From NCBI RefSeq assembly GCF_001194135.2, contig NC_068994.1:6567731-6631730 (forward strand): a stretch of 64,000 bases of DNA, given 5' to 3'. The notes beneath the pieces were generated by a model, which made no database searches, had not been told where the DNA came from, and worked only from the letters and a program-made list of their open reading frames with translations. The translations under genes were made by a program, and so were the position numbers. The stretch's first letter is position 1, and every line of letters begins with the position of its first letter. Shown here piece after piece: positions 2,719-63,931 of this stretch. This stretch comes from Octopus bimaculoides. Taxonomy: Eukaryota.

Positions 2719-5700
2719 GTCAAGTACTGTGTATTGAACGAGGAAATATGAGCTGCTGCCTGTGGATCCATCCAATTCCGATTTTGAAACCTGTTGAGGA
2801 TGGAAAACAAACGTATCATGGAATATATATATATATAACAACTACTGACTGACTTTAAATATCCTGTTCAGAAAGATAATCTGCAAATATTAATTTACAT
2901 CGATTCCAGTTATTATACAGTCTTGTATATCTCGAACTTATCCCTCAGAGTTGCCTCCAGATTGCCTGAAATTTGATTTTTTTTTTTTTTGTTTTATATA
3001 TCATTTACAATTCTTGTTATCACTCTTTAAAAAATATTTTACAAATATTGAGTGAAATATTTTGTCTCTTATGAATGACTGGTTTAAATTGGAAAATGAT
3101 GGAGAATGAAGCAAAGATTGTATTTAGTGATGTTACTAGTGAGCAGATTCTGAACAAAGACAATCCATCTGAAGCAAATGAGGCTGAAGAGCAACCTCTT
3201 CCACGTGACTTTGTTCTGAGAAAAGAGAATTTGTCTGAGAGAAATGTAACTAAAGAGAGACCCTTCCCCTATGACTTTGTTCAGAACGCAGATAACCCTT
3301 CTGAGGGCACTAAGACTGGAGAAAAACCTCTGCCTTATGGCTTTATTCCAAACAGAAATTACTCATCTGAGGGAAATGAGACTGATGAAAAACCTCTCTC
3401 CTATGACCTTGTCTTAAACAGAAATAATCCATCTGAAAGAAATGAGGTTGAAGAAAAACCTCTCGCTTATGGCTTTGTTTCAAACACAAAAAATTCATCG
3501 GAAGGAAATGAGACTGAGGGGCAACATTCCCCACGGGACTTTGTTCTGTACACGGATAACTCATCTGCAGAGACTGAGTCGGAAGAGCAACCTGTTCCTC
3601 ATGACTTCGTTCTGAACAAAGACGATTCATCTGAGGTGAATGAGACTAAAGAAGGACCTCTTGCCTCTGATTTTGTTCCAAACACAAATACCTCAACCGA
3701 AGGGGTTGAAACTGAAGAAAAATCTCTCCCCTGTGACTTGGTTCTGAACACAGATAATCCATCTGGGATTAAGTCGTCATCTGAGGGGAATCTGACTGAA
3801 GAAAGGGCTTTTCCTTATGGCTTTGTTCTAAACACAGGTAACTCATACGGGGTCAAGTCATCTGAGCGGAGTGTTACTGAAGAAAAATCTCACCCTTATA
3901 GCTTTGTTCTAAACACAGGTAACCCATCTGGGGTTAAATCATCTGAGGGGAACCTGACTGGAGAAAAATCTCACCCTTATAGCTTTGTTCTAAACACAGG
4001 TAACTCACCTGGAGTGAAGTCATCGGAGGGGGATATGTCTGAAGTGCGATCTCTCCCTTACAGCTTTGTTCTAAACACAGATAACCCATCTGGGGTTAAG
4101 TCATCTGAAGGGAGTGTGACCGAAGAAAGGTCTCTACCTTACGGATTTGTTCTGTACACAGGTCACTCATCCATGGGGAATGAGTCTAACATGGCACCCC
4201 TTCCCTATAGCTTTGTTCTGAACACAGACATTTCATCTGAGGGGAGCGAGACCAAAGAGGGGTCACTCACCTGTGACCCTTCAACTGGAGTGAATAAAAT
4301 CGAAGGGAAACCTCTCCTATGTGACTTTGTTATGAACACGGCTAACTCGTCTGAAGTAAATGATATGGACGAGAAAATTTTCCTTTGTGACTTCTGTGGT
4401 GAATCCTTCGACGTTTACATCAACCTTTCTGCACACAAACAGTTACACACAGGTGGTAGACCATTCCATTGTGAAATTTGTGATAAGAACTTTTCTACTT
4501 ATGAAAGCCTCTCTCGACATATACGAATACATACAGGAATAAGGCCGTATGTTTGCGAGATTTGTAGCAAAACGTTTTCTGAAAGTAGTCACCTCTATAA
4601 GCACCATCTCGTACACACAGGTGAGAAACCTTACCATTGTGAAATTTGTGGGAAAGCATTTTCTCAAAGTGGCACCTTGTGTCGCCATCGACTGATACAT
4701 ACCGGGGAGAAACCGTATCGCTGTGAAACTTGCGGTAAATCATTCTCTCGGAACAGTCATTTATCAACCCACCGATGGATACACACTGGAGATAAACCAT
4801 TCTATTGCGAAACGTGTGGGAAATCTTTCTCGACAAACTCGGCATTATTGGCACACAAAAGAACTCACACGGGGGAAAAGCCTTTCCGTTGTGAAACATG
4901 CGACAAAACATTTTCAACTAATTTTGCATTATCGTTGCATATACGGGTGCACACAGGCGAGAGGCCATATCACTGCGAAATTTGCGACAAGTCCTTTTCC
5001 ACAAACTCCACGTTATCTTCACATCGTCGGACACACACCGGAGAAAAACCATACCATTGTGAGACATGCGGTAAATCTTTCTCGACGAGCTTCGCATTAT
5101 CTTTGCACCGACGAGTTCACACGGGGGAAAGACCTTACCGTTGTGATCTTTGTTCCAAAACATTCTCCACCAATTCTACCTTGTCTTCACATAAACGAAC
5201 GCACACTGGTGAGAAACCTTTCCACTGCGAGATCTGTGGTCATTCCTTCGGTCAGAAATACACGTTATCTGTTCACAAACAAATCCACAACAGAGAAAAC
5301 AACAACAGTAATAGCAATAATAATAATGATAATAATAGTAATAGTAATAATAATAATAATAATAATGATAATAGTAATGATAATAGTAATGATAATAATA
5401 ATGATAATAATAATAATAATAATTTCTGTGAAATTGTACAACAAATAAACAAATAAATAAAGCATGGGAATATCATTTATATGGACGGGGAGGCATTTCA
5501 GTGAATCACTTCATAAATTCCAAAATATTTACACAGAAAGATTTGTGTAAGTATTTGTATATGATATACACTCACACAGACAAAGTAATAAAAAAAACAA
5601 ACAAAATCAAATTGGTATGAGTTTTAATTGTCATTAATCTTTGTATTTTATGTCATCAAAGATTCACGAGCTACACACACTCATAGGTATGTATGTGTAT

Positions 5701-6014: not shown

Positions 6015-6618
6015 ATTGCTTCATCTTGACGGATGGTAGCCATTTCAATTAGTTTACATCATCTCGACAATCTCCCATACGTCCGTGTGCTCCGAGAAGC
6101 GTCACAAGCTTTAATAGAGAGACACGATGAGCCGGACAAAACGAGACATCTGTACATCATTGGATTCAAGTGATACACACTTGTACAACACATATCCCAC
6201 TCTTTCTCTCTCCCCCCTCCATCCCTCTCTATCTATCTATCTATCTATCTGTCTCTATCTCAGTATCGGTAACTGGAATCCAGTGAATAACAAACATTGC
6301 AAGATGACTGGCAGCTACTTCAACTGCAGGTTTGATTTCAGAGTGCCTTCTCTTAGAATTTACCCATCAATGGGCACCCGTAAAGCAGCAGGGTTTTGAA
6401 AGAAGCACGTTTGCACAGAACTGGGTGGCTGTTGCTTGTTTTTTTATCGTATGGGTTGTCCAAAAACCACCCTTCTCATCAAGCCTGCTTGGTGGGCTTG
6501 CCAATTTAGTCACCAATGACCCAACCATGCAACAAGTTGTAATGGGGTTACATGTTAACAGTAGCACTCAAAAAAGATCTGACAATATGTGTGTGTATAC
6601 ATCTATATATATTTGTGC

Positions 6619-6696
<78 letters not shown>

Positions 6697-7812
6697 GACA
6701 TGGAAAGAATAAAAGCTCCATTGAAGAATAAAATTGTTTTATACAGAATCCATTATTGATTTGTGAGAATTTTTTTTAAGTATTACAGCCATTTTGGAAC
6801 TAACAAACATTTTTTGCAGAAGTAAGGAATCTACTGTTATATGGCATTATAAAAGTAAAAGAAAGAAAAGGATTATCTGCTAAAATGTTATTTCTGATGC
6901 CAAAGTGCTATTTTCCAAAAGTCTTTGATTGATTTGGTGATGATTCCTACATTTCAGCTGGAGATACCACAAACACACACATGCCCTCAGGCACATTTTT
7001 GCCACTTAGTACAAATGTTGATTTGGAATTGGTCAAACAACATTCATTGTTGTTATAATTTATCCTTAACATTCCTTTTTTCACTTCATTAACCCTTTTG
7101 TTACCAACCCAGCTGAAACCGGTTCTGGCTCTGAGTACAAATGTCTCGTTTTCACAAGTTTTGAATTAAAATCTTCCACCAAACCTTAGTTACAATCCTA
7201 ACACTAGTTTAATGATAACTAAGTTATTTTACTAAATTCTTTATTATATTTAAAGTAATTGAAAATTTCAAAATAAATATAGTAACGAAAGGGTTAAACA
7301 CTATACATTCATTAATGGCCTCTTGTGCATTTTTACATTCGGTAAGCGAAGTAATTGTCGTGGCCAATACCAGTACTGTCTGGACTGGCACCCATGTTGG
7401 TGGGACAAAAAACACCATTCGAGTGTGGTCGATGCCAGTACCGCTTGACTGGCTCCTGTGCTGGTGGCATGTAAAAAGCGCCATTCAGGCATGGTCATTG
7501 CCAATGTTGCTTGACTGGCTCCTGTGCCGATGGCACATTAAAAGCATATGTATATATATATATATATATATATAAACACATACACGCACATATTACTCTT
7601 TTACTTGTTTCAGTCATTTGACTGTGGCCATGCTGGAGCACTGCCTTTAGTCGAGCAAATCGACCCCAGGACTTATTCTTTGTAAGCTTAGTACTGATTC
7701 TATCAGTCTGTTTTGCCAAACCGCTAAGTTACGGGGACGTAAACACTCCAGCATTGGTTGTCAAGCGATGTTGGGGGGACAAACACAGACACACAAACAT
7801 ATACACACATAC

Positions 7813-7844
<32 letters not shown>

Positions 7845-9639
7845 CGACGGGCTTCTTTCAGTTTTTGTCTACCAAATCCACTCACAAGGCCTGAGGCTAT
7901 AGTAGAAGACACTTGCCCAAGGTGCCACGCAGTGGGACTGAACCCGGAACTATGTGGTTTGTCAGCAAGCTACTTACCGCACAGCCACTCCCGCGCCTAT
8001 ATGTATATGTATGTAGATATATGTACAAACATGCATATACACTGAATTATAGGTATTCTGAAACACAAATGTCAGCAGGCTTTCGTTGTATAAACACGAG
8101 TGTCATGGAAAGGGGAGGCTTGCATGTACAGACAATTGCCAGTCTTCCTCGAAAGAAATCCTGCCCAGACTTGCACATACACGCACTGATACATGACCAA
8201 CTTTGACTGGGAGGGCCTTGTTAAAATGTACACAGAAGAAACACAAACTTTTGTTGATTCACAGCTTGTGTAAAGAAAGCAATTATCGTGTCTACTGATG
8301 TGTGTTGAGCTTATGTTTTTTACTATTAATCCATAAACCATCGTCTTTCATTTGTGTCATTTGATATTATTCTGTTATTAAAACAGTGGATTGACAGAAT
8401 AATTAGAGCACGGGACAAAATACCTTTATGGTATTTAGTCAATACTCTCTATGTTGTGAGTTCAAATCTCGCCAACATCAACATTGTCTTTCATCTTTTT
8501 TGCAGGTGGTAGGGAGCAATAAAATTAGTACCAGTTGAGCACTGGGGTTGATATTCCAAGTTCAAATCCCGCTAAGGCTAACTTTGCCTAGTACCAGTTA
8601 AGCACTGGGGTTGGTGTTCTCACTTCAAATCCTACCAGGAACAACTTTGTCTTTCAGCCTTTCCAAGTTGAAAGTTACTGGGTAATTTCAATAGTGCTGG
8701 TATCATGAAAAATGTAACCAGTACATGCCGTAAAGTGGTAGACCTTAGCAAGAATATTCAGCCACAGAAACGATGCAAAAATAGAAGTTGGGACCTGATG
8801 CAGCTCCAACCCAAACCAGAATGGGAAATAGATGTCAAATGCTGATAACATTTATATGTTCTTCATTGCTATCAGTGGTTCTCAACCAGGGTCCAAATAA
8901 CAATTTTGGGGGTCCACGCAATGATATAGTAAGTTGAGGATCCACAACAGTCTTTTAAGGGCCCCTAAAAAAAATTTCATTTTAGATGTATGTTTGGTGT
9001 GTATTGCAAGAAACAGCTGGGTTTCTTTCTCTAAACATTTTTACATAGTTCAACCTAAAGTGTGAAAAAAAAAAAAAGGAATTTTGAAAAAAAGTTTCTA
9101 TAAAACTAGTTTTTAAAGATCAAATGGCTATGGGGGTCCCCCAGGATAAGATAGTAATCAAAGGGGTCCATAGAAAAAAACTGGTTGAGAACCTCTGGAT
9201 TAGATGTGTATAGTACTGAGGCATTGTTTAATAGCTGGATGCCCTGCCTGTCACTAACTCTTGTTTCTGCAAGTAAGGGATCCCTTATTCCATATGTCTT
9301 TGAAGGTAGAAAGTCAATGTTTGATTTGTTGATAGAAGACATGATGATAGTATATATATATATAAAGGTTATGAAGGGTATTGGAGTCAACTAAACCCTA
9401 AAGGTACATATATATAAATGAAAGAACCAGGGATCAAGGTGTAGGAAGAAAGTTAGCTTCAAGCAATCTGTAGTAAATATACAAAAATAACTTTCAAGGA
9501 CAATAGTGGTTTATTGAGATGGAAGGCTGTGGATATTTTCTGTATCAAAGAACAATAAGCTGGAAAACGTTCTTTTTATATCTCATAGGTAGGCAACCAG
9601 GTGTGCAAAGAAGAATACAAGAATTACGGAATGGAGAAG
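2719..9639 (+). CDS. Putative multi-exon uncharacterised protein with HIT-like motifs (partial). Candidate exons 2719-2812, 6053-6169, 6264-6329, 9601-9639
   Basis: AG/GT-bounded exons with matching phases (1-2, 2-2, 2-2, 2-2). Joined translation: QVLCIERGNMSCCLWIHPIPILKPVEDGKQTLHHLDNLPYVRVLREASQALIERHDEPDKTRHLYIIGFNIGNWNPVNNKHCKMTGSYFNCRCAKKNTRITEWR. Some donors are weak (GTGATA, GTATCA). Start and stop not located. Confidence 0.45.
3075..5456 (+). CDS. C2H2 (Kruppel-type) zinc-finger protein, 793 aa: N-terminal tandem repeats, 11 fingers (4380-5288), poly-Asn tail
   Basis: Uninterrupted ORF with 11 CxxC-x12-HxxxH units joined mostly by TGEKP/TGERP-type linkers. AATAAA overlaps the stop codon. 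Confidence 0.95.
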   Translation: MTGLNWKMMENEAKIVFSDVTSEQILNKDNPSEANEAEEQPLPRDFVLRKENLSERNVTKERPFPYDFVQNADNPSEGTKTGEKPLPYGFIPNRNYSSEGNETDEKPLSYDLVLNRNNPSERNEVEEKPLAYGFVSNTKNSSEGNETEGQHSPRDFVLYTDNSSAETESEEQPVPHDFVLNKDDSSEVNETKEGPLASDFVPNTNTSTEGVETEEKSLPCDLVLNTDNPSGIKSSSEGNLTEERAFPYGFVLNTGNSYGVKSSERSVTEEKSHPYSFVLNTGNPSGVKSSEGNLTGEKSHPYSFVLNTGNSPGVKSSEGDMSEVRSLPYSFVLNTDNPSGVKSSEGSVTEERSLPYGFVLYTGHSSMGNESNMAPLPYSFVLNTDISSEGSETKEGSLTCDPSTGVNKIEGKPLLCDFVMNTANSSEVNDMDEKIFLCDFCGESFDVYINLSAHKQLHTGGRPFHCEICDKNFSTYESLSRHIRIHTGIRPYVCEICSKTFSESSHLYKHHLVHTGEKPYHCEICGKAFSQSGTLCRHRLIHTGEKPYRCETCGKSFSRNSHLSTHRWIHTGDKPFYCETCGKSFSTNSALLAHKRTHTGEKPFRCETCDKTFSTNFALSLHIRVHTGERPYHCEICDKSFSTNSTLSSHRRTHTGEKPYHCETCGKSFSTSFALSLHRRVHTGERPYRCDLCSKTFSTNSTLSSHKRTHTGEKPFHCEICGHSFGQKYTLSVHKQIHNRENNNSNSNNNNDNNSNSNNNNNNNDNSNDNSNDNNNDNNNNNNFCEIVQQINK
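3168..4379 (+). repeat. Coding tandem repeat, ~17-18 units of 22 aa (66 bp) or 27-28 aa (81-84 bp), consensus SEGNETEEKPLPYxFVLNTDNP(SGVKS)
   Basis: Read directly from the translation, e.g. SEGTKTGEKPLPYGFIPNRNYS and SEGNLTGEKSHPYSFVLNTGNSPGVKS. Confidence 0.9.
7093..7293. mobile_element. piggyBac-like MITE
   Basis: Bounded by TTAA (7089-7092 and 7294-7297) with imperfect TIRs CCCTTTTGTTACCA / TAGTAACGAAAGGG. A related decayed copy lies at ~56030-56270. Confidence 0.65.
7594..7998 (-). mobile_element. tRNA-headed SINE, family B, near full length
   Basis: Reverse complement of the 26347-26737 copy, with an internal (TA)n tract. Confidence 0.85.
8873..9197. mobile_element. hAT-Charlie-like MITE
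   Basis: TIRs CAGTGGTTCTCAACC / GGTTGAGAACCTCTG. No clean TSD. Confidence 0.7.
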
Positions 9640-36125: not shown

Positions 36126-37147
36126 GAAGTGATGTTTACTGAATAGAAATCAAACTTCCATGCTCAGACACTTCACAAATACATGTTTTTGGGTTCAATC
36201 CTGCTGCATGGTACCTTGGACAAGTGACTTCTACAATAATTTCAGATCAACCAAAGCTTTATGAGTGAAATTTGGTCGGCAGAAAGGTTAGCACACTGGG
36301 CGAAATGCTTAGCGGTATTTTGTCAGCCACTATGTTCTGAGTTTAAATTCCGCCAAGGTCGACTTTGCCTTTCATCCTTTCGGGGTCGATTAAATAAGTA
36401 CCAGTTATGCACTAGGGTCGATGTAATCGACTTAATCCCTTTGTCTGTTCTTGTTTGTCCCCTCTGTGTGTAGCCCCCTTAGGGGCAGTAAAGAAATAAG
36501 AAACTGTGGAGAATTCCATTGGTGGGATTGTAGCTCTTGTCTTTGGGCTAGTAGACTTAATCTACTCCAACTGACCCTTGGGTGCCTTTTGCAGAGTCCA
36601 GCTCCCTGTTGCAAATATTCAGGCTAGATCNNNNNNNNNNNNNNNNNNNNNNNNNNNNNNNNNNNNNNNNNNNNNNNNNNNNNNNNNNNNNNNNNNNNNN
36701 NNNNNNNNNNNNNNNNNNNNNNNNNNNNNNNNNNNNNNNNNNNNNNNNNNNNNNNNNNNNNNNNNNNNNNNNNNNNNNNNNNNNNNNNNNNNNNNNNNNN
36801 NNNNNNNNNNNNNNNNNNNNNNNNNNNNNNNNNNNNNNNNNNNNNNNNNNNNNNNNNNNNNNNNNNNNNNNNNNNNNNNNNNNNNNNNNNNNNNNNNNNN
36901 NNNNNNNNNNNNNNNNNNNNNNNNNNNNNNNNNNNNNNNNNNNNNNNNNNNNNNNNNNNNNNNNNNNNNNNNNNNNNNNNNNNNNNNNNNNNNNNNNNNN
37001 NNNNNNNNNNNNNNNNNNNNNNNNNNNNNNNNNNNNNNNNNNNNNNNNNNNNNNNNNNNNNNNNNNNNNNNNNNNNNNNNNNNNNNNNNNNNNNNNNNNN
37101 NNNNNNNNNNNNNNNNNNNNNNNNNNNNNNNNNNNNNNNNNNNNNTA

Positions 37148-40442: not shown

Positions 40443-41500
40443 TTATTTAGTTCCATGGTTGTTGATTTCATGACACCTGCCATCAATATCCAAGACGACC
40501 AGCCTACCTTCTGGGTCTAGAAATATTGCTCTTACTTTGAGGTCCAGACTCTTCTGAAAAAGCACCTTGGTACGACCTCCACCCATTCTCGGCAGACACA
40601 GAGAAAAATAAATGTCAAATTCTCTGCCGCTGAACATGTGCTGGAAGGCCTGCGGGTTGCAGAGTCTGGTCTCACTGATGGCTATGATATGCACATTCTG
40701 TGACTTGATGTTATTTAATAGGTATCCCTGTTTCCAAGGCGACCCCAAGCCATGCATATTTATATAACCGATTCTGAGCATGTTCCTATCATAAGTTGTG
40801 CTTTACACACAAAGGGAAGACGAGAGAGAGAGAGAGAGTCACTTACTGTTCAAAAGTTGCTTATCCTTCACCTCACAGTGTTCTCTCAAAAGGTTTTTGT
40901 TTAATTTTTTTGAAATCTCCCTACTGCATCTGGGTAGAGAGACTTCAGGGTGTTTTGTGTCACATGTATGATTTTTATGTGTTGTGGTGGTGTTGTGCAA
41001 AGGTAGCAACATGGCGTTCTGCCTTCAATGGCCACGTGTATGGTTGTGCCATCTGGAAGTTGAATCAGATCTGGGAGATTTTCTATTGTTTCCAGATTTG
41101 CTTGAATTAATAAATCCAACTCTTGTCCAATCCCATTTTGCTGTCCCAGGACGGCAATTTCTAGAATGTTGATTTGATCTCCAAAATCATAACAGATGGC
41201 TGACACCAGCCGCCTTATTCCTATTTCAGGGGGCACGTCTTTAGTTTTTACCTTTGTCACCCAACAACCAAAGTAAGTGGGAATCATTATAAATTCCTCA
41301 CATTCCAGGCTTTTTGTTGCATGTTCCTTTGTACGTTCTTCCATATCAAACCATACCTCTACAGTGGTAAATCTTTTGCCCCTTGTAATGCATGTTTTAA
41401 AAGCCCATGTGGGATGTAGACATTTCTCAACTGATTCTTTAGTTGCCTGTTCTATCTTTTATTTTTTGTGATCAGAGTTTTGTAAATAATGGGTTTTTTG
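40443..41500 (-). mobile_element. Tx1/L1-like LINE 5' part: ORF1 (gag-like, 41500-40900) plus the N-terminus of the APE endonuclease (40781-40443)
   Basis: ORF1: KTCITRGKRF...IPTYFG...KDVPPEI...VAIEGRTPCCYLC with a decayed zinc knuckle. ORF2: LRIGYINMHGL...IIAISETRL...DPEGRLVVLD, which contains the APE motifs N-x-x-G and [QS]ET. Confidence 0.85.
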
Positions 41501-41535
41501 GAAACGTCTTGCAAAATGCTTTCTGAAGGACAGAA

Positions 41536-42395
41536 GCAACAATGATAGAATTGTATTTGGTGTCTTGGCTCCTGTTTCTATAACTTGTACGTTTGCTACA
41601 GATGTTGCCATGATTTCTATGAATTCTGTCATAGATTGAACAGCAATAATAGAATCGTATTTAATATCTTTGTCTTCGATTTTCTACATCTGCATATGCT
41701 GCAAATGTTACATTGGTTTCTATGAATTCTATCATAGAATGAACAACAATAATAGAATGGTATTTAGTATCTTGGTTGTTGGTTTTTCACATCTGCATAT
41801 GCTACAAATGTTACGTTGGTTTCTATGAGTTCTATCATAGAATGAACAGCAATAATAGAATTGTATTTAATATCTTTGTCTTTGATTTTCTACATCTGCA
41901 TATGCTGCAAATGTTACGTTGATTTCTATGAATTCTATCATAGAGTGAACAGCAATAATAGAATCGCATTTAGTATCTTGGTTCAGAAATGGTGTAATCC
42001 TAGTGAGTAGGAGCAGTAATCCAACAGGAACAGTAATCCGAAGGCACAAGAATTCCAGGAATTGGGTACTCCTAGTTCAGGATCCATGTGAGCATGCGTT
42101 ATATAGTGAGTTCAAACAAGAAAAACGACAAAAAAAAACAACAACGCGAGGATGTGATACAGATCTGGCGTTACTGGACGCTCAGGAAAGGAAAGAAAGA
42201 GAATTTGACGTTTCGAGCGGAGCTCTTCGTCGGATATTTAGGAAAGTCCAAAAAAGGGAAAACAGAAAAAGAAAAAATCACCAACGATATACACAAGGTT
42301 GGTTTTTGACAGGAGCATATGCTACAAATGTTATGTTGGTTCCTATGAGTTCTATCATAGAGTGAACAACAATAATAGAATCGGATTTAGTATCT
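41536..42395. repeat. 103-bp tandem array (~5.5 units) interrupted by a ~315-bp insertion (41983-42297)
   Basis: The anchor CAATRATAGAAT recurs at 41540, 41644, 41747, 41850, 41953 and 42370. The unit sequence resumes exactly after the insertion. Confidence 0.88.
42199..42240 (-). ncRNA. Degenerate minimal hammerhead-like motif
   Basis: Minus strand reads AAAUAU CCGACGA A GAGC-UCC-GCUC GAAAC GUC AAAUU. Core U4 is mutated to C and stem I has a mismatch. Confidence 0.4.
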
Positions 42396-42419
42396 CAGCT
42401 GCTGAGTTTTTGACACACA

Positions 42420-42753
42420 TGCATATGGTACAAATGTTACCACCACCTCCGCCCATTCTCGGCAGACACTGAGAAAAATAAATATCGAGTTCTCTGCCGA
42501 ACATGTGCTGGAGGCTCCGCGGGTTGTGGAGTCTGGTCTCACTGAGGGCTATGATATGCTCATTCTTTGACTTGATGTCATTTAACAGGTAGCCTTGTTT
42601 CCAAGGCAACCTCAAGCCATGCATATTTATACAACCGATTCTCAGCATGTTCCGATCAAAAGTTGTGCTTTACACACGAAAGGAAAAGAAAGAGAGGGAG
42701 CGAGAGAGAGAGAGAGAGAGACACTTACTGTTCGAAAGTTGCTTATCCTTCAC
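42420..42753 (-). mobile_element. Second copy of the Tx1-like inter-ORF spacer plus endonuclease N-terminus
   Basis: MLRIGCINMHGLRLPWKQGYLLNDIKS...ALSETRL and the (GA)n-CACTTACTGTT spacer repeat 40590-40870. Confidence 0.85.
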
Positions 42754-42754
42754 C

Positions 42755-43370
42755 TCTAGGTCTAGGGTCACATCAAGGAAATCCACCGTTTTCAGGATGG
42801 TCTCTATAGTGACCTTCAGTCCGAAGGAGTTCATGGTGCCTGTGAAGTCCTTTTTGAGCCCATCTAACGCGAGGCCATTACCCTCTCTTGATATTGCCAG
42901 CATGTCATCCCTGTAAAGGCCAAAACTAGTTGAAAGGAATTTTTTTTTTTTAGTATATCTAGGGTAAAGAGACCCACTAGGGCACATACATCTGCACTGT
43001 CAAAAGCACCCGTTGCCACATTGAAGGAGCGTTCTGGGTCAGTGTGTTTGGTCCAAGCAGACCCCTTACTGAAGAGTAGGGTTCTTATGGTGCATATGTC
43101 CTCATTGTTGACATTAGTATGGGCCCTATTGAAGTTGAGTGCCTTTAACAGGAGCTCCCTTGATATGAATGGTTAGAAGTCCACTACATCAAATTGGGCA
43201 AACCTAGCCCTACCCTTCTTGCTGTTGGCCTTAAACCATGTAATGGCTTTGTTGATGTTGCGCCAAACGGCGAGGTCAGAGACGTTTCTAACGCCATTAC
43301 TGATCTTCCTGACAAACCATTTGCTCACCTGTTCGATCTCAAGCTTTGCTGGGTCTCTCAGCCAGTGTTC
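42755..43370 (-). mobile_element. Penelope-like reverse-transcriptase core relic
   Basis: VWRNINKAITWFK...FAQFDVVDF*P...LLFSKGSAWTK...FNVATGAFDSADVC ... GLYRDD ... LKVTIETILKTVDFLDVTLDL, all characteristic PLE RT motifs. Confidence 0.88.
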
Positions 43371-43529: not shown

Positions 43530-43720
43530 CCACTTCAGCCAAGTAGATTGGTATGAGAATCAGTTTGTCACTCCTTAATTTTGTTATAAGGTGCTTCCTG
43601 ACTTCCTCCTCAATCAGGAATGTTACATTTATCATATTGAATCATTTTCCTCTTGTGACACATGTTTTGGTATCCAAGATTGGCACTGGACAATTTTCAC
43701 TAAAACTAGTAAAATATTCT
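43530..43720 (-). mobile_element. Diverged second Tx1-like ORF1 fragment
   Basis: KTCVTRGK*FNMINVTF...LILIPIYL aligns with KTCITRGKRFTTVEVWF...FIMIPTYF at 41400-41280. Confidence 0.65.
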
Positions 43721-44019
43721 TTTTTTTTTATTTCTGAACGTTTCCCTAAACCACAATAATTTGTAAGACTGAAACAAATGTGGAATTCATTTATTTAAGT
43801 CTCCTACTCACCGATTTGAGACAAAGTTTTTCAAGCCATGAATAAAACCTTGTGAACCAACAAACTTTCACACACACATACACAAACAGGGGTCAACAAT
43901 AATAGGTATACAGTTGCTTAAAATGAGCAATATATTCTTTTTATTTTTTTATTTCTCTCTGAACTGCAATAATTTGTAAGACTGAAACAAGTGTGGAATG
44001 CATTTTTACAGAAGTAAAA

Positions 44020-44520
44020 AAGGCATAATTCAGTACCTACCATGTCTTGGAAAGGGAAAGTCGATGTGCCTTGTATGGTTCCAGTGTAATGAAACATTTG
44101 CTCAATGGATCGGGTGAGGAATGATTTTCCACTGTTTGCTACACCTTCTAATACAAGCATATTTGTTTTGGGATGGTTTTCGTTTAATACATCTCATACA
44201 TCCTGTACAAATTGTTGAGGACCATTTTGCTGTATATTTTTCATGAAAGAGTTAGTTATAGTAATCTTTGGTTTGATATGCCGTCCAGCCCATTTTGAGG
44301 AATTTTTTCTTAAAATCTATGTCTAATGTTTTTAATTTCAAGATTTCTGCAACTTTTTTAATCATTGTCTCATATTGCAGATGAGATAAATCTATCCTGA
44401 AGTTTTGAGCATTTGGTTTGTTACACCAATCATCTTTAAACTCAGTTTCATTTCTGTACTTGTTTTCAGAATTCAGAAAACTCAAGTAATTGAATAGACT
44501 CCTGTGTATTTCTCTTACAT
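44020..44520 (-). pseudogene. Endogenous parvoviral element, NS1/Rep SF3 helicase relic
   Basis: FVQDV*DVLNENHPKTNMLVLEGVANSGKSFLTRSI...GTSTFPFQDMVGTELCLF. Walker A at 44145-44122, preceded by PKxN, followed by FPFQD (44058-44044) and truncated at Walker B. One TGA at 44196-44194 and a frameshift near 44280. Confidence 0.8.
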
Positions 44521-45869
44521 TGACAAATGTTGGTTCTGTTTATTTTTCTGCATGTATTTTTCTCGATGATCCTGTGTAGTGTGTAGTTTTTGGTATGTAT
44601 TCTTCTGTGCACCAGTAACTGAATGTTTTGTTGGCCCCTTTTTCACTGCTGAGTAGTAGTTGTCTTGGTTATATTCTTTATTTGGCACACAGGCCATGGC
44701 ACAGAGGGGGACAGCACAAAGACAGACAGAACACCACAGTGGGGACAAAAAACATAAAACGAATGAATGAGAGATGGATAATAATTAAATGAGGATGTAA
44801 TAGCTACTTGAACCCCACTCTCAAGCAGTACCATTTAACTGTTTAAATACAAAGTTTTTATATCATTTCTTCTACCTCCCCCTACACATACACTTTTTTT
44901 TTTCTTTTTAGTATCATATATGTAGTCTTCAAAAATTCTAAAAGCTTACTCATGCTTTACCATTTTATATATGGCAACAAGTTGTCGTAATCTATAACTG
45001 ACGGTAGGTCGTCAAACTTTACCCTCACTCCCATTGGATCCATCTTGTTTCTAAACCATTCCTTTAATTTTTTGTACCTCTCTTTGACTACTACTATGGC
45101 TTTTGTACTTTATGGGTAATTTAACTCTTATCACCGATTTAAATTTGGTGATTTTCTTTTCTATATCTGCAGCAACTAATGTGAGATTGCAGACCTGGCA
45201 ACTAATGTGAGATCGCAGCCATGGCCGATGCCAGTGTTGCATGTCCGGCCCATTAAAAAGTACCCTTGATGCATTGGGTGATATGATATTCTTGAGAAGA
45301 CCTATTGAGTCAAGTAAAACTAAGATAGTAGCTGTGGCCAGTGCCCCTTGAACGGCTCCCATGCCAGTGGCATGTAAAAAGTACCATCCGAGCGTGGTTG
45401 ATGCCAGGTCTGCCTGACTAGCTCCCATGCCGGTGGCACATAAAAGTCACCCACTACACTCTCCGAATGGTTGGCGTTAGGGAGGGCCTCCAACTGTAGG
45501 AACCTTGCGAGATCAGATTGGAGCCTGGTGCAGCTGCTGGCTTTCCAGACCTCAGTCAAACCATCCAACCCATGCCAGCATTTAAAACGTGTGTTAAACG
45601 ATGATGATGATGGTCTGTAGAGATAACCTTAACAAATGATGTAAAAAGCACACTGCTAATGCAGTAGAACGTGGTATTGACTTATAAAAATGTTTAATAT
45701 ACTTTATACTATACAAGGTACAGCAGAAGTAATGTCCTTTTTGCATTTGATAACTTTTATAGTATAAAAATTCTTAATATTATGGAGATGTACTTGCATA
45801 GCAAGTGACTTGATCTGAGATCGTGTGCTGGAACGAAAACAATTGCAGCATGGAAGGTGTTTATAAGCC

Positions 45870-46075
45870 ATTTAAGAAACACACAAAAACCGTTAGATTC
45901 ACTTCAACATTTAAATTTAATTTGTCAATATATTTTCGTCGCTTTGAGACCGCGACCTGCTGCAGCACGGAATTTTGTCAGTGAACAGGTCGCGGTCTCA
46001 AAGCGACGAAAATATTTTGGCAAATTAAATTTAAATGTTGAAGTGAATCTAACGGTTTTTGTGTGTTTCTTAAAT
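45870..46075. other. Long hairpin / foldback MITE-like element, 90-bp arms, 26-bp loop
   Basis: 45870-45959 matches the reverse complement of 45986-46075 at 88/90 positions. Confidence 0.92.
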
Positions 46076-57214: not shown

Positions 57215-57833
57215 AATGTTTCATAGTCAACCCTTTAGTGTTCGCATTATTCTGCCAAAATTAATGCTTTTTTATCCACATTGTTTTGAACTAATCAAGC
57301 ATTATCTTGTAGCTATGAGATCTTGATCATCATCATCATCATCATCATCATCGTTTAACGTCCGCTTTCCATGCTAGCATGGGTTGGACGATTTGACTGA
57401 GGACTGGTGAAACCAGATGGCTACACCAGGCTCCAATCTGATTTGNNNNNNNNNNTAATGCTTTTTTATCCACATTGTTTTGAACTAATCAAGCATTATC
57501 TTGTAGCTATGAGATCTTGATCATCATCATCATCATCATCATCATCGTTTAACGTCCGCTTTCCATGCTAGCATGGGTTGGACGATTTGACTGAGGACTG
57601 GTGAAACCAGATGGCTACACCAGGCTCCAACCTGATTTGGCAGAGTTTCTACAGCTGGATGCCCTTCCTAACGCCAACCACTCAGAGAGTGTAGTGGGTG
57701 CTTTTACGTGTCACCCGCACGAAGGCCAGTCAGGCGGTACTGGCAACGGCCACGCTCAAAATGGTGTATTTTATGTGCCACCCGCACATGAGGTAGCTGT
57801 TAATTTTATAAACGATATTGTAGGGCCAACCCT

Positions 57834-61432: not shown

Positions 61433-61548
61433 GGAAGTGGGTTTGAAGAACCAGTGAAGTTAACAATTGCAAGGAAATCTTCCTCCAGTTCATATCAGTC
61501 CTGACAGAGAAAGCCAGAAGTGTGAGACAGTTATTTGGAGGAGACACA
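61433..61548 (+). other. Candidate upstream (probably 5'UTR) exon of the downstream ZNF gene
   Basis: Acceptor TTACTTTTCAG at 61432 and a GT at 61549, followed by a poly-T tract and AG at 61619, just before the ATG at 61631. Confidence 0.35.
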
Positions 61549-61572
61549 TGTGAATATATTTAAAAAAATCTT

Positions 61573-61612
<40 letters not shown>

Positions 61613-61630
61613 AATAAAGAAAGAACAACA

Positions 61631-63931
61631 ATGAGTGTGAAAGAAGAAGTTTTTACTTGCCATATATGTGAAGAGGTCTTTCCAGAAGATTCTCTCTTAC
61701 AGGATCATGTTATCATCCATCAAGATAATGTTTCTTATCGCTGTGACATCTGCCAGAAAGATTTCTGCAAATATTCCGATGCTTGTGTCCATCTGAAACC
61801 CATTGCTAATCCCAGGCTGTTTCACTGCGATGTGTGCTCGAAAGAATTTGTCACAAACAAGAACTTGAAAAGACACTTGAGGACACACACCGGAGAGAAA
61901 CCCTACAACTGCGAACTGTGTGGCAAACACTTTGCTCAGGCGTCATCATTGAAACGACACATGAAAGCACACAGTGGCGAGAAACCATATTCTTGTGAAG
62001 TGTGTGGAAAGAAGTTTCTTGCTGGAAATGATTTAAAGAGACATAATCGAACGCATACTGGTGAAAAGCCATTTGCGTGTGATATCTGTGGCAAACGATT
62101 TGTTCAGAATACAGATTTGAAACGGCATAATAAAGTACATGTCCGTGAAAAGAATTTTCCCCGTGAACCGCTAAAGAAAGACACTGCAAGTTTCAAATCT
62201 AAAACCACAAAAAAATTACCTACAACGTATCCTATTGAGAAGCAATACTGTTGTCAAATATGTACAAAGGTATTCCCGAAATTTTCAAAATGGGCCAATC
62301 ACGTTCGTAGCCATCCTGGTGAAAAACCTTATTATTGTGAACTGTGCAAAAAGAAATTTGCACAGGGTTCTTCTTTAAAGCGACACATCAGAGCCCATTC
62401 GGGGGAGCGTCCTTTCTCCTGTGAAGTGTGTGCAAAGCGATTTGCTGCCAATAACGACTTGAAAAGACATGCACGTACACACACAGGTGAAAGGCCTTAC
62501 ATTTGCAATGTCTGTGGAAGAGGATTCGGTACGAACAATGATCTGAAAAGACATTTGAAAATTCACACTGGAGAAAAACCTTTCCATTGTAAAGAATGTG
62601 GGAAAAGCTTCCTGACAAATTCTAGGCTACAGTATCACTTAAGATGCCACTCTGGGCTGAATCTAACCTGTAAAGTATGTAAAAAAGTTTTTCTAAAAAG
62701 TTCGACCCTGAAGAGTCATCTTTTGATACATAACAGAGGAGTTTGTGATAAGGATTCTCCTAAGACAATTCCACTGATAAGGACTAAGAACGGTGAAGAA
62801 CAGAGGAATTACATTTGTTCTATTTGTAAATTAACCTTCCAAACTCATATTGAATTAGGTCGTCATGTCAGAACACACAGTGAAAATCGAAATTTGAATT
62901 GTGAAATACCTGGAGACGGTTTAACTCCACATCATTTTCTGTCAGTGAACAACAGTGTGATTGACAATGTGAGCCGAGTGGCCAACACTTGTGAACCTCT
63001 AAGTGAACTTAAGGCTGGAAACAATTTAATCGTTCATGAGAAACGGTTGACGAATAAAGAATCGTATGCCTGTGGCATTTGTCAAAAATCTTTTGTAACT
63101 CAGAACAACCTAAACAACCATGTAAGGATTCATACTGGGGAAAGGCCCTTTCCTTGCAAGGTGTGTCGGAAAAGATTTATAACAAACAATAACTTAAAGC
63201 GGCACAGTCGAACCCACACAGGTGAGAGACCATTCTCATGTGAAGTTTGTAGCAAAAGCTTCCTGACGAGCAATGATTTGAAAAGACATAATAAAACACA
63301 CACAGGTGAGAGACCCTTTTGTTGTACGATATGTACAAAGGGATTTGTTCAAAATACTGATTTGAAGAGACATATGAAAGTGCACCTTCGTGAAAAGAAA
63401 CAAGACACCGAGTTGCCGCTTAAGAAAGACAGTGTCGTCAGTTTTAAGATGCACAAAGGTTTGCTCTCCTCTGACAAAGTGCATCGTTGCCAGATATGTA
63501 ATAAAACTTTCCTCAGGTATTACAGATTGAGGATTCACCTAAGGACACACACTGGAGAAAAGCCTTACAATTGTAGGACTTGTGGCAAAGGTTTCACGAC
63601 TAGTTGCAACCTTAAGAGACACACAAAATTTCATGCTGGAGAGAAACTTTTCTCGTGTGAAATTTGTGGCAAGAATTTTGTCATGAACTGTGATTTGAAA
63701 AGACATATTCGAATTCACACAGGTGAAAAACCTTACTCTTGTGGTATCTGTCAGAAACATTTCACCACCAGTAATGTCTTGAAAAGACACAACAAAATCC
63801 ACATGAAGGGTGATTTTTACCCGGGTACCCAATGTCAAGAGAACTTTGTTAATCCCAGTGATTTTAACATCCATTTAGGGATGCACAGTTTGGTTGATCC
63901 CATTCTACTTGAAAACAAAAAAACTTTTTGA
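61631..63931 (+). CDS. C2H2 (Kruppel-type) zinc-finger protein, 20 canonical plus at least 2 degenerate fingers in several clusters
   Basis: Long ORF with TGEKP/TGERP-linked fingers. The ORF-track start (TTG at 61535) runs through a poly-T tract, so ATG 61631 (MSVKEEVF) is the likelier start. Confidence 0.95.
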   Translation: MSVKEEVFTCHICEEVFPEDSLLQDHVIIHQDNVSYRCDICQKDFCKYSDACVHLKPIANPRLFHCDVCSKEFVTNKNLKRHLRTHTGEKPYNCELCGKHFAQASSLKRHMKAHSGEKPYSCEVCGKKFLAGNDLKRHNRTHTGEKPFACDICGKRFVQNTDLKRHNKVHVREKNFPREPLKKDTASFKSKTTKKLPTTYPIEKQYCCQICTKVFPKFSKWANHVRSHPGEKPYYCELCKKKFAQGSSLKRHIRAHSGERPFSCEVCAKRFAANNDLKRHARTHTGERPYICNVCGRGFGTNNDLKRHLKIHTGEKPFHCKECGKSFLTNSRLQYHLRCHSGLNLTCKVCKKVFLKSSTLKSHLLIHNRGVCDKDSPKTIPLIRTKNGEEQRNYICSICKLTFQTHIELGRHVRTHSENRNLNCEIPGDGLTPHHFLSVNNSVIDNVSRVANTCEPLSELKAGNNLIVHEKRLTNKESYACGICQKSFVTQNNLNNHVRIHTGERPFPCKVCRKRFITNNNLKRHSRTHTGERPFSCEVCSKSFLTSNDLKRHNKTHTGERPFCCTICTKGFVQNTDLKRHMKVHLREKKQDTELPLKKDSVVSFKMHKGLLSSDKVHRCQICNKTFLRYYRLRIHLRTHTGEKPYNCRTCGKGFTTSCNLKRHTKFHAGEKLFSCEICGKNFVMNCDLKRHIRIHTGEKPYSCGICQKHFTTSNVLKRHNKIHMKGDFYPGTQCQENFVNPSDFNIHLGMHSLVDPILLENKKTF

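What the first reader, a model, noticed from the sequence alone, without database searches (positions are those of the whole stretch)
44020..44520. Endogenous parvovirus NS1 relic in a cephalopod-like genome
Seen: PKTNMLVLEGVANSGKS...FPFQD with an in-frame stop and a frameshift, so it is a fossil rather than contamination by an intact virus. Established (recalled): parvoviral SF3 helicases have PKxN-hhhh-G-P-x-x-x-GK[ST] followed by FPFxD before Walker B. The LEGxxNxGKS form is closest in memory to brevihamaparvovirus-type NS1, though papillomavirus E1 and CRESS Reps share the Walker A layout. Inference: evidence of germline infection by a probably undescribed mollusc parvovirus lineage.
Basis: partly seen in the sequence, partly recalled or inferred. 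Interest (0 to 1): 0.8.

Follow-up and report, generated by a model that had tools for sequence, protein, structure and literature searches.

The report
Decayed parvovirus NS1 fragment in octopus
A 650-base, broken and doubly truncated piece of a parvovirus replication gene sits in an Octopus bimaculoides chromosome; it is a real viral fossil, but similar sequences in this octopus were already reported in 2016, so it is a fairly ordinary find.

Summary
Window 44017-44668 (minus strand) carries about 217 codons homologous to parvovirus-type NS1/Rep. They run from just after the nuclease tyrosine motif to the start of Walker B, with Walker A readable. The best hit among 1.84 billion proteins has E 5.9e-14. 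tblastn against the window gives up to 3e-33.

The fragment is read in two frames, so it has at least one frameshift. It has two to three in-frame stops and lacks both ends of the gene. No other NS1 piece and no capsid piece lies in the 64 kb.

The window is Octopus bimaculoides chromosome CM046614.1 (about 6.61 Mb). The relic lies in a 20-kb gap-free stretch and is flanked on the upstream side by a high-copy octopus repeat.

Full-length relatives have HUH and SF3 motifs. They score above the Pfam Parvo_NS1 cut-off, and their profile hits AAV Rep best in the PDB. They sit next to a capsid gene with an N-terminal PLA2 domain, and one relative ends in a Y-shaped hairpin. The source is therefore parvoviral, not papillomavirus E1, CRESS, Polinton or Helitron.

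No brevihamaparvovirus affinity was returned. The lineage is also not undescribed: François et al. 2016 list O. bimaculoides and Lamellibrachia sequences of this group.

Side observation: in this lineage the capsid gene lies directly upstream of NS1.

The parts
44017..44668 (-). Relic of a parvovirus-type NS1/Rep gene, given as one broken gene. It corresponds to residues 135-358 of a 547-residue intact relative (P0041). Breaks: truncated at both ends, at least one frameshift, two to three in-frame stops.
   Evidence: tblastn of 59 relatives: P0041 45% identity over 199 columns, P0002 42% over 207; two frames. HMMER E 5.9e-14.
44032..44238 (-). The part of the relic that matches the SF3 helicase core (N-terminal part of the ATPase domain only).
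   Evidence: Pfam Parvo_NS1 20.4 bits (cut-off 20), profile positions 87-158 of 271. PPV_E1_C 21.3 bits (cut-off 26.5).
44122..44145 (-). Walker A (P-loop) codons, still readable. The proline that 14 of 15 relatives have inside the loop is an alanine here.
   Evidence: G, K and S of the loop invariant in 15/15 relatives; lysine invariant in 10/10.
44239..44668 (-). The part of the relic that matches the region between the nuclease domain and the helicase core of NS1 (linker/oligomerisation region).
   Evidence: tblastn with P0041, P0002, P0009 and P0012 reaches 44623-44668. By itself it has no Pfam match (protein 2).
43919..44005 (.). Non-viral sequence abutting the 3' cut of the relic. It is one copy of a local duplication whose other copy is at 43701-43792 (78% identity).
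45334..45612 (.). High-copy octopus interspersed repeat upstream of the relic, with at least 10 further copies in the window and one in L009. It marks host sequence on that side.

Best explanation
Window 44017-44668 is an endogenous parvoviral element. DNA of a parvovirus-like virus entered the germline of an ancestor of Octopus bimaculoides, and what remains here is about 40% of its NS1 (replication initiator/helicase) gene. It has since decayed as neutral DNA, and the nuclease domain, the rest of the helicase and any capsid gene have been lost. It cannot encode a working protein and most likely has no function now. Shown: the homology, the breaks, the truncations, the host context, and the parvoviral nature of the gene family. 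Inferred: the route of entry (capture of viral DNA at a chromosome break by non-homologous joining, as is generally assumed for such elements), the neutrality, and that the deletions came after integration rather than at it.
For: Homology: HMMER E 5.9e-14 against 1.84e9 proteins; tblastn E 3e-33. Family identity: relatives score 31-106 bits on Pfam Parvo_NS1 (cut-off 20), above their own PPV_E1_C score in 9 of 10. Their profile hits AAV Rep40/Rep68 at 1e-13 and NS1 9kbj/9kbg, ahead of papillomavirus E1 at 5e-11. Full-length relatives keep the H-x-H (10/10) and tyrosine (9/10) nuclease motifs and all the helicase motifs. The nuclease-region profile best matches the HUH domain of plasmid RepB, with both motifs aligned (E 0.009). 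Linked capsid gene: PLA2 domain at 47 bits; AAV VP1 unique region at E 8e-10; the body weakly matches shrimp parvovirus capsids (6wh3 at 8e-4). One 4017-nt relative begins with an 87-nt Y-shaped hairpin (z -5.2). Fossil state: two frames, 2-3 stops, both ends missing; no further NS1 or VP piece in the 64 kb. Host context: a zinc-finger ORF in the window is identical to one on O. bimaculoides CM046614.1; the nearest assembly gaps are at 37145 and 57446; an octopus repeat lies upstream; relic GC is 0.34 against 0.38 for the surroundings. A second, independent octopus locus (L005, CM046628.1) holds decayed VP and NS1 relics side by side.
Against: On its own the window piece only just reaches the Pfam Parvo_NS1 cut-off (20.4 against 20) and scores slightly higher on the papillomavirus E1 model (21.3, below that model's cut-off of 26.5). 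The family assignment therefore rests on relatives. None of the family-defining parts other than Walker A survives in the window: there is no nuclease domain, no motifs B' or C, no capsid and no hairpins. The relic is only 40-45% identical to every relative, so its exact source virus is unknown. Nothing here shows whether it is transcribed or processed into small RNAs.
Confidence: 0.88

Rival explanations
1. The fragment is not the trace of its own germline infection. It is a secondary copy of an older octopus parvoviral element, moved here by segmental duplication or carried along by a transposon, and then decayed.
For: The genome holds at least three loci of this gene family: the window, L005, and KOF81493/A0A0L8GWZ8. 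The relic lacks both gene ends and lies among repeats and LINE-like fragments. Relatives in other genomes occur as multi-copy arrays.
Against: It is only 43-52% identical in protein to the other octopus copies. Outside the NS1-derived stretch, the only DNA matches to L005 within 41-48 kb of the window are short (37-173 nt) stretches that are not collinear with the relic. No target-site or transposon ends were recognised around it.
Confidence: 0.15
2. The SF3 helicase fragment comes from a non-parvoviral source: a papillomavirus/polyomavirus-like helicase, a CRESS-DNA virus Rep, a D5-like primase-helicase of a Polinton-like or giant virus, or a cellular P-loop ATPase.
For: The window piece alone scores about equally on the E1 and NS1 Pfam models. 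Papillomavirus E1 structures are the second group of PDB hits.
Against: NS1 scores above E1 in 9 of 10 relatives. No CRESS Rep, D5, Pif1 or Helitron family was returned at E<=0.01. The relatives have an N-terminal HUH domain. They sit next to a capsid gene with a parvovirus-type PLA2 N-terminus, on roughly 4-kb units, one of which has a terminal hairpin.
Confidence: 0.03
3. The relic is kept because it does something as RNA, for example as a source of piRNAs or other small RNAs against related viruses, as proposed for viral fossils in arthropods.
For: Nothing direct. The idea rests on the general literature on EVE-derived immunity cited in PMC11357303.
Against: No expression data were available. 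The sequence shows the stops, frameshift and truncations expected of neutral decay. There is no sign of a cluster of viral fragments in the 64 kb.
Confidence: 0.07
4. Chance similarity, contamination or misassembly.
For: The assembly is a draft with N gaps.
Against: E 5.9e-14 in a 1.84e9-protein search. The breaks rule out an intact contaminating virus. There is a 20-kb gap-free context with an octopus repeat.
Confidence: 0.01

Closest known systems
Parvovirus-related sequences of Octopus bimaculoides and Lamellibrachia sp. reported by François et al. 2016 (Sci Rep 6:30880, PMC5013282). Examples are KOF81493 = UniProt A0A0L8GWZ8, A0A0L8FGN6 / XP_014789984.1 (LOC106883473), and Lamellibrachia satsuma KAI0231278.1.
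   Same: Same gene family and, for the octopus entries, the same host genome. They are the top hits of the window piece, at 47-59% identity in the helicase core. The paper states that the mollusc sequences branch outside all known parvovirus genera.
   Different: This is a different locus on a different chromosome from L005. It is far more decayed and much shorter, and it was not picked up by the word-based protein search. Whether the 2016 screen saw this locus is unknown.
Endogenous parvoviral elements in general, such as the IHHNV-derived elements of penaeid shrimp and the dependoparvovirus- and protoparvovirus-derived elements of vertebrates.
   Same: A germline-fixed fragment of NS1 with stops and frameshifts, no hairpins, and host flanks. 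This matches the description of EVEs in PMC11357303 and PMC13426907.
   Different: The host phylum and the viral lineage differ. Only about 40% of one gene remains.
AAV Rep40/Rep68 and parvoviral NS1 helicases with solved structures (1s9h, 1u0j, 7jse, 9kbg).
   Same: They are the best structural-database matches of the family profile, at E 1e-13 over about 140 positions of the SF3 domain.
   Different: Sequence identity is low. The window keeps only the first third of that domain. No confident model could be made for comparison.
Papillomavirus E1 helicase (Pfam PF00519; 2v9p, 2gxa).
   Same: SF3 fold and Walker A layout; the second-best PDB group.
   Different: Relatives score lower on E1 than on NS1 in 9 of 10 cases. 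They have an HUH nuclease domain rather than an E1 DNA-binding domain, and a parvoviral capsid gene as neighbour.

Membership tests
Parvoviridae NS1/Rep (origin of the relic) | Significant sequence match to the NS1 helicase family (Pfam PF01057) | tested here: met
   The window piece scores 20.4 bits against a cut-off of 20, which is marginal. Its homologues score 31-106 bits. The profile's best PDB hits are AAV Rep and NS1.
Parvoviridae NS1/Rep (origin of the relic) | SF3 Walker A motif | tested here: met
   Readable at 44122-44145. The loop glycine, lysine and serine are invariant in 15/15 relatives.
Parvoviridae NS1/Rep (origin of the relic) | SF3 motifs B, B', C and the arginine finger | tested here: not met
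   Absent from the window because the relic ends where Walker B begins. They are present and invariant or nearly so in 10/10 full-length relatives.
Parvoviridae NS1/Rep (origin of the relic) | N-terminal HUH (rolling-circle) nuclease domain | tested here: not met
   Not in the window: the relic starts just after the tyrosine motif, and no further NS1 piece lies in the 64 kb. In relatives the H-x-H is 10/10 and the Tyr 9/10, and the profile hits the RepB HUH domain at E 0.009.
Parvoviridae (genome of origin) | Linked capsid (VP) gene, with a PLA2 domain in many lineages | tested here: not met
   There is no VP similarity anywhere in the window. It is met in relatives: L001 and L011 VP carry PF08398, the AAV VP1 unique region matches at E 8e-10, and shrimp parvovirus capsids match at 8e-4. 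A VP relic lies beside the NS1 relic in octopus locus L005.
Parvoviridae (genome of origin) | Roughly 4-6 kb linear genome with terminal hairpins | tested here: inconclusive
   Nothing was tested for in the window, and nothing is expected there since both ends are cut. Relative L001 is 4017 nt and starts with an 87-nt Y-shaped hairpin (z -5.2). Its other end shows none and may be incomplete.
Endogenous viral element | Viral sequence contiguous with host DNA on both sides, and disabled | tested here: met
   The host was identified by an exact ORF match to GCA_001194135.2 CM046614.1. There are no gaps between 37146 and 57445. An octopus repeat lies at 45334-45612. For the stops, frameshift and truncations.
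   No hit carrying that name came back from any search. The tools hold few named parvoviruses. An N-terminal PLA2 in the lineage's VP argues against this group on the statements of PMC13426907.
Papillomavirus E1 helicase (PF00519) | Score above the family cut-off, and best among the SF3 families | tested here: not met
   The window scores 21.3 against a cut-off of 26.5. In 9 of 10 relatives E1 scores below NS1.
CRESS-DNA Rep, Helitron RepHel, Polinton/D5-like helicases, cellular ATPases | Any significant match to their protein families | tested here: not met
   None appears among the Pfam hits of the window pieces or of 10 relatives at E<=0.01, apart from weak generic P-loop families below their cut-offs and one sub-threshold REP_ORF2-G2P hit in P0019.

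The most novel reading that the evidence does not exclude
The relic belongs to a clade of parvovirus-like viruses whose capsid gene lies directly upstream of NS1 on the same strand. This is the reverse of the NS-then-VP order of all monosense parvoviruses I know of. The clade has living representatives (roughly 4-kb virome or metagenome contigs L001 and L012) and fossils across Lophotrochozoa (octopus, vestimentiferan tubeworm, and at least one other host). In every context where both genes can be seen, the VP end is 0-140 nt from the NS1 start. One contig begins with a terminal hairpin on the VP side. If this layout is native and not yet described, the octopus fossils document an unrecognised parvoviral genome architecture and its antiquity.
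Probability: 0.3. Interest if true: 0.6.

Novelty: new member of a known kind. Interest (0 to 1): 0.3.

Why it matters
The locus itself adds one more, heavily eroded, data point to the record of parvovirus integrations in cephalopods. It is useful for a census and for dating if orthologous positions in other octopods are compared, but it does not change what is known. It also shows that very decayed fossils, which word-based searches miss, can be found with a full profile scan of unrepaired pieces. The relatives pulled in by the search are more interesting. They tie the octopus and tubeworm sequences to complete roughly 4-kb genomes with a PLA2-bearing capsid. They also suggest a capsid-first gene order, which would be a new layout for the family if it is confirmed.

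Tried and rejected
- **Word-based protein search.** With the window piece it found nothing. With P0005 or alignment A1 it returned only 2-3 proteins, probably swamped by low-complexity words.
- **Neighbouring ORFs.** Pfam on eight neighbouring ORFs gave nothing.
- **PDB search.** With the window piece alone it returned only noise.
- **Splice-donor idea.** I considered that the sequence after the aromatic-rich stretch was a splice donor, which would make this an exon. I rejected it because homology to relatives continues a few codons past it into the Walker B lead-in.
- **Spurious hits.** Two of the 26 HMMER hits (P0015, P0022) are repetitive proteins. A weak tblastn hit at 41018-41230 (E 0.099) overlaps a retroelement-like ORF and repeats a part of NS1 that the relic already has, so I judged it spurious.
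- **Collection scans.** IMG/VR and JGI metagenome scans for relatives found none.
- **Exact look-ups.** The 80-residue ORF of the relic and P0003 were not on record.
- **Run accessions.** SRR11869384-94 were not found in the paper library, so the host of the closest relatives P0041 and P0002 is unknown.
- **Canonical order in L013.** The third ORF of the 'Mops bat parvovirus' contig shows no similarity to the VP profile, so I could not confirm the canonical order there by homology.
- **Literature.** Searches for octopus or cephalopod parvoviral fossils found only François et al. 2016.

Full report
**1. What is in the sequence**

I did not repair it. I searched with the pieces as they stand, marking a stop by X.

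- Alone, the piece is a marginal SF3 helicase match. Pfam Parvo_NS1 gives 20.4 bits (cut-off 20) and PPV_E1_C gives 21.3 bits (cut-off 26.5).
- The PDB search with the piece alone gave nothing meaningful.
- The word-indexed search of 5.8 billion proteins found nothing.
- A full HMMER scan of 1.84 billion representatives found 26 proteins at E<=1e-3, with a best of 5.9e-14 at 59% identity. Two of the 26 are repetitive proteins and irrelevant.

**2. Extent and state**

tblastn of all the retrieved relatives onto the window places the homologous stretch at 44017-44668, minus strand. That is about 150 bases longer than the finding.

- It corresponds to residues 135-358 of the intact 547-residue relative P0041 (45% identity over 199 columns) and to residues 9-225 of P0002 (E 3e-33).
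- It starts just after the nuclease tyrosine motif and stops where Walker B begins.
- It is read in two frames, so it has at least one frameshift. It has two in-frame stops within the aligned blocks and possibly a third in the unaligned joint.
- The N-terminal roughly 130 residues and everything after the start of Walker B are gone.
- No other NS1-like or capsid-like piece exists anywhere in the 64 kb. One weak hit at 41018-41230 (E 0.099) is spurious.
- The 3' cut abuts a small local duplication (43701-43792 and 43919-44005).
- Upstream lie unique sequence, then a high-copy octopus repeat (45334-45612) and a palindrome (45870-46075).

**3. Host and context**

A 793-residue zinc-finger ORF of the window (3075-5456) is identical to a gene on Octopus bimaculoides GCA_001194135.2 chromosome CM046614.1. 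That puts the relic at about 6,611,747-6,612,398 of that record. The relic lies in a gap-free stretch between N runs ending at 37145 and starting at 57446. Its GC content (0.34) is like its surroundings (0.38). It is therefore host-flanked in a chromosome-level assembly.

**4. What the gene family is**

Named members of the closest group are:

- O. bimaculoides A0A0L8GWZ8 ('SF3 helicase domain-containing protein');
- O. bimaculoides A0A0L8FGN6 / XP_014789984.1 ('Parvovirus non-structural protein 1 helicase domain-containing protein', LOC106883473);
- Lamellibrachia satsuma KAI0231278.1.

The rest are unnamed ENA or Logan contigs. A second tier of hits comes from roughly 4-kb contigs and includes the NS1 of 'Mops bat parvovirus', an unclassified member of Parvoviridae.

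Evidence that the family is parvoviral NS1:

- Ten relatives score 31-106 bits on Parvo_NS1, and nine of them score higher there than on the papillomavirus E1 model.
- The family profile hits AAV Rep40/Rep68 (1e-13) and NS1 (9kbj, 9kbg) ahead of papillomavirus E1 (5e-11).
- In an alignment of ten full-length proteins, the H-x-H pair is invariant and the downstream tyrosine is kept in 9/10. The Walker A lysine, the Walker B acidic pair, B', the motif C asparagine and an arginine are invariant or nearly so.
- A profile of the N-terminal region best matches the HUH domain of plasmid RepB, with both catalytic motifs aligned (E 0.009).

**5. Genomes of the relatives**

- P0005 sits on a 4017-nt metagenome contig (L001) together with a 525-residue protein. 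That protein's N-terminus is a PLA2 domain (PF08398, 47 bits).
- A profile of three such proteins matches the AAV VP1 unique region (E 8e-10). In its body it weakly matches the capsid proteins of shrimp parvoviruses (6wh3 at 8e-4, 3n7x at 0.013).
- L001 begins with an 87-nt Y-shaped hairpin (DNA fold -22.4 kcal/mol, z -5.2). The other end shows none.

These are the hallmarks of Parvoviridae. By the account of PMC13426907, a PLA2 at the VP1 N-terminus is a feature of Parvovirinae and Densovirinae. I could not test that likeness directly.

**6. Other copies**

A second octopus locus (L005, chromosome CM046628.1) holds a capsid relic (6576-7344) directly followed by an NS1 relic (7344-8570). The NS1 relic has five stops. 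The RefSeq gene model LOC106883473 is built on this relic.

The window copy is only 43-52% identical to the octopus copies and 40-45% to everything else. Outside the NS1-derived stretch, the only DNA matches to L005 are short stretches that are not collinear with the relic. I cannot tell whether it stems from its own integration or from an old duplication, and I give the latter 0.15.

**7. Prior knowledge**

François et al. 2016 (PMC5013282) screened animal genomes and transcriptomes for parvovirus-related sequences.

- They list six molluscs and two annelids.
- They include 'Octopus_bimaculoides_KOF81493' (matching P0003 by eye) and several Lamellibrachia sequences in their SF3 alignment.
- They list O. 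bimaculoides WGS hits.
- They state that the marine-mollusc sequences branch outside all known genera.

The lineage is therefore not undescribed, although this locus may be. No other paper on cephalopod parvoviral fossils was found in the held library.

**8. Explanation**

The relic is best read as a dead endogenous parvoviral element (confidence 0.88). Viral DNA was captured in the germline. The surviving roughly 40% of NS1 then drifted and was trimmed. It cannot make a helicase, because motifs B through C and the nuclease are absent. A role as an RNA source cannot be excluded without expression data (0.07). A non-parvoviral SF3 source is unlikely (0.03). Chance or artefact is negligible.

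**9. Side observation**

In every context where both genes are visible, the capsid gene ends 0-140 nt upstream of the NS1 start on the same strand:

- L001;
- L012, where the upstream ORF matches the VP profile (hhalign 98.4%);
- three units of a head-to-tail array in a tubeworm-like genome (L011);
- L010 and L004;
- octopus L005;
- a trace in L002.

The gaps are too short to hold two genome termini, and L001's hairpin lies on the capsid side. As far as I know, monosense parvoviruses have NS upstream of VP, so this looks like a different layout. I could not find it described, but my literature access is partial. The ends of L012 are an identical 17-nt inverted sequence that looks to me like a random-amplification primer. 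Those ends are therefore not genome termini.

**10. Limits**

No eukaryotic genome collection could be searched by DNA, so there is no orthologue-based dating and no copy census. The hosts of the closest relatives (runs SRR11869384-94; samples ERZ25084518 and ERZ23499376) are unknown.

Noticed in passing
L001 464-3953; L012 2-3833; L011 5617-18199; L010 6924-9605; L004 7801-9605; L005 6576-8570; L002 132-2040: In all relatives where both genes are visible, the capsid gene ends 0-140 nt upstream of the NS1 start on the same strand. This is the opposite of the usual NS-then-VP order of monosense parvoviruses.
   Followed up: partly
L001 1-87: The 4017-nt metagenome contig starts with a Y-shaped hairpin: a 20-bp stem with two small arms (-22.4 kcal/mol, z -5.2), like a parvoviral telomere. 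The other end has only 64 nt after NS1 and no hairpin.
   Followed up: partly
L011 5600-20747 (ENA ERZ21939214 ctg11576l, >=90% identical to a Lamellibrachia satsuma protein): A head-to-tail array of at least four VP-NS1 units, with copies 50-80% identical to one another. Some are intact (VP 588 aa, NS1 574 aa) and some are broken. It is either an integration hot spot or an old tandem amplification.
   Followed up: partly
L002/L003 (Logan SRR11869390, SRR11869394) and L004/L010 (ENA ERZ25084518): Intact NS1 reading frames persist beside decayed or missing capsid genes. One is a 547-aa ORF identical in two runs. The other is a cluster of eight 489-535-aa copies, >=90% identical, on several large contigs of one eukaryotic assembly, with Mutator and DDE transposase fragments nearby. 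These could be recent integrations or retained or co-opted NS1 genes.
   Followed up: partly
L005 8001-10298 (O. bimaculoides CM046628.1): RefSeq gene model LOC106883473 (XP_014789984.1, 189 aa) is built on an NS1 relic that carries five in-frame stops when read against full-length relatives. It is probably an annotation artefact rather than a working gene.
   Followed up: partly
L012 1-17 and 3942-3958: Both contig ends carry the same 17-nt sequence in inverted orientation. It looks like a random-amplification (SISPA-type) primer left in the assembly (my own knowledge), so the contig ends are not genome ends.
   Followed up: no
window 3075-5456 and 61526-63928: Two long open reading frames (793 and about 800 codons) of C2H2 zinc-finger type by eye, typical of the octopus zinc-finger expansion. 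The first is identical to an annotated O. bimaculoides gene.
   Followed up: partly
window 40446-43172, minus strand: Two similar LINE-like fragments with endonuclease-like N-termini by eye (42501-42756 is 84% identical to 40634-40874), plus a 103-bp tandem repeat at 41614-41979. Pfam gave no hit for these ORFs.
   Followed up: partly
window 45870-46075: A 206-bp near-perfect palindrome (90% self-complementary), of unknown nature, 1.2 kb upstream of the relic.
   Followed up: no
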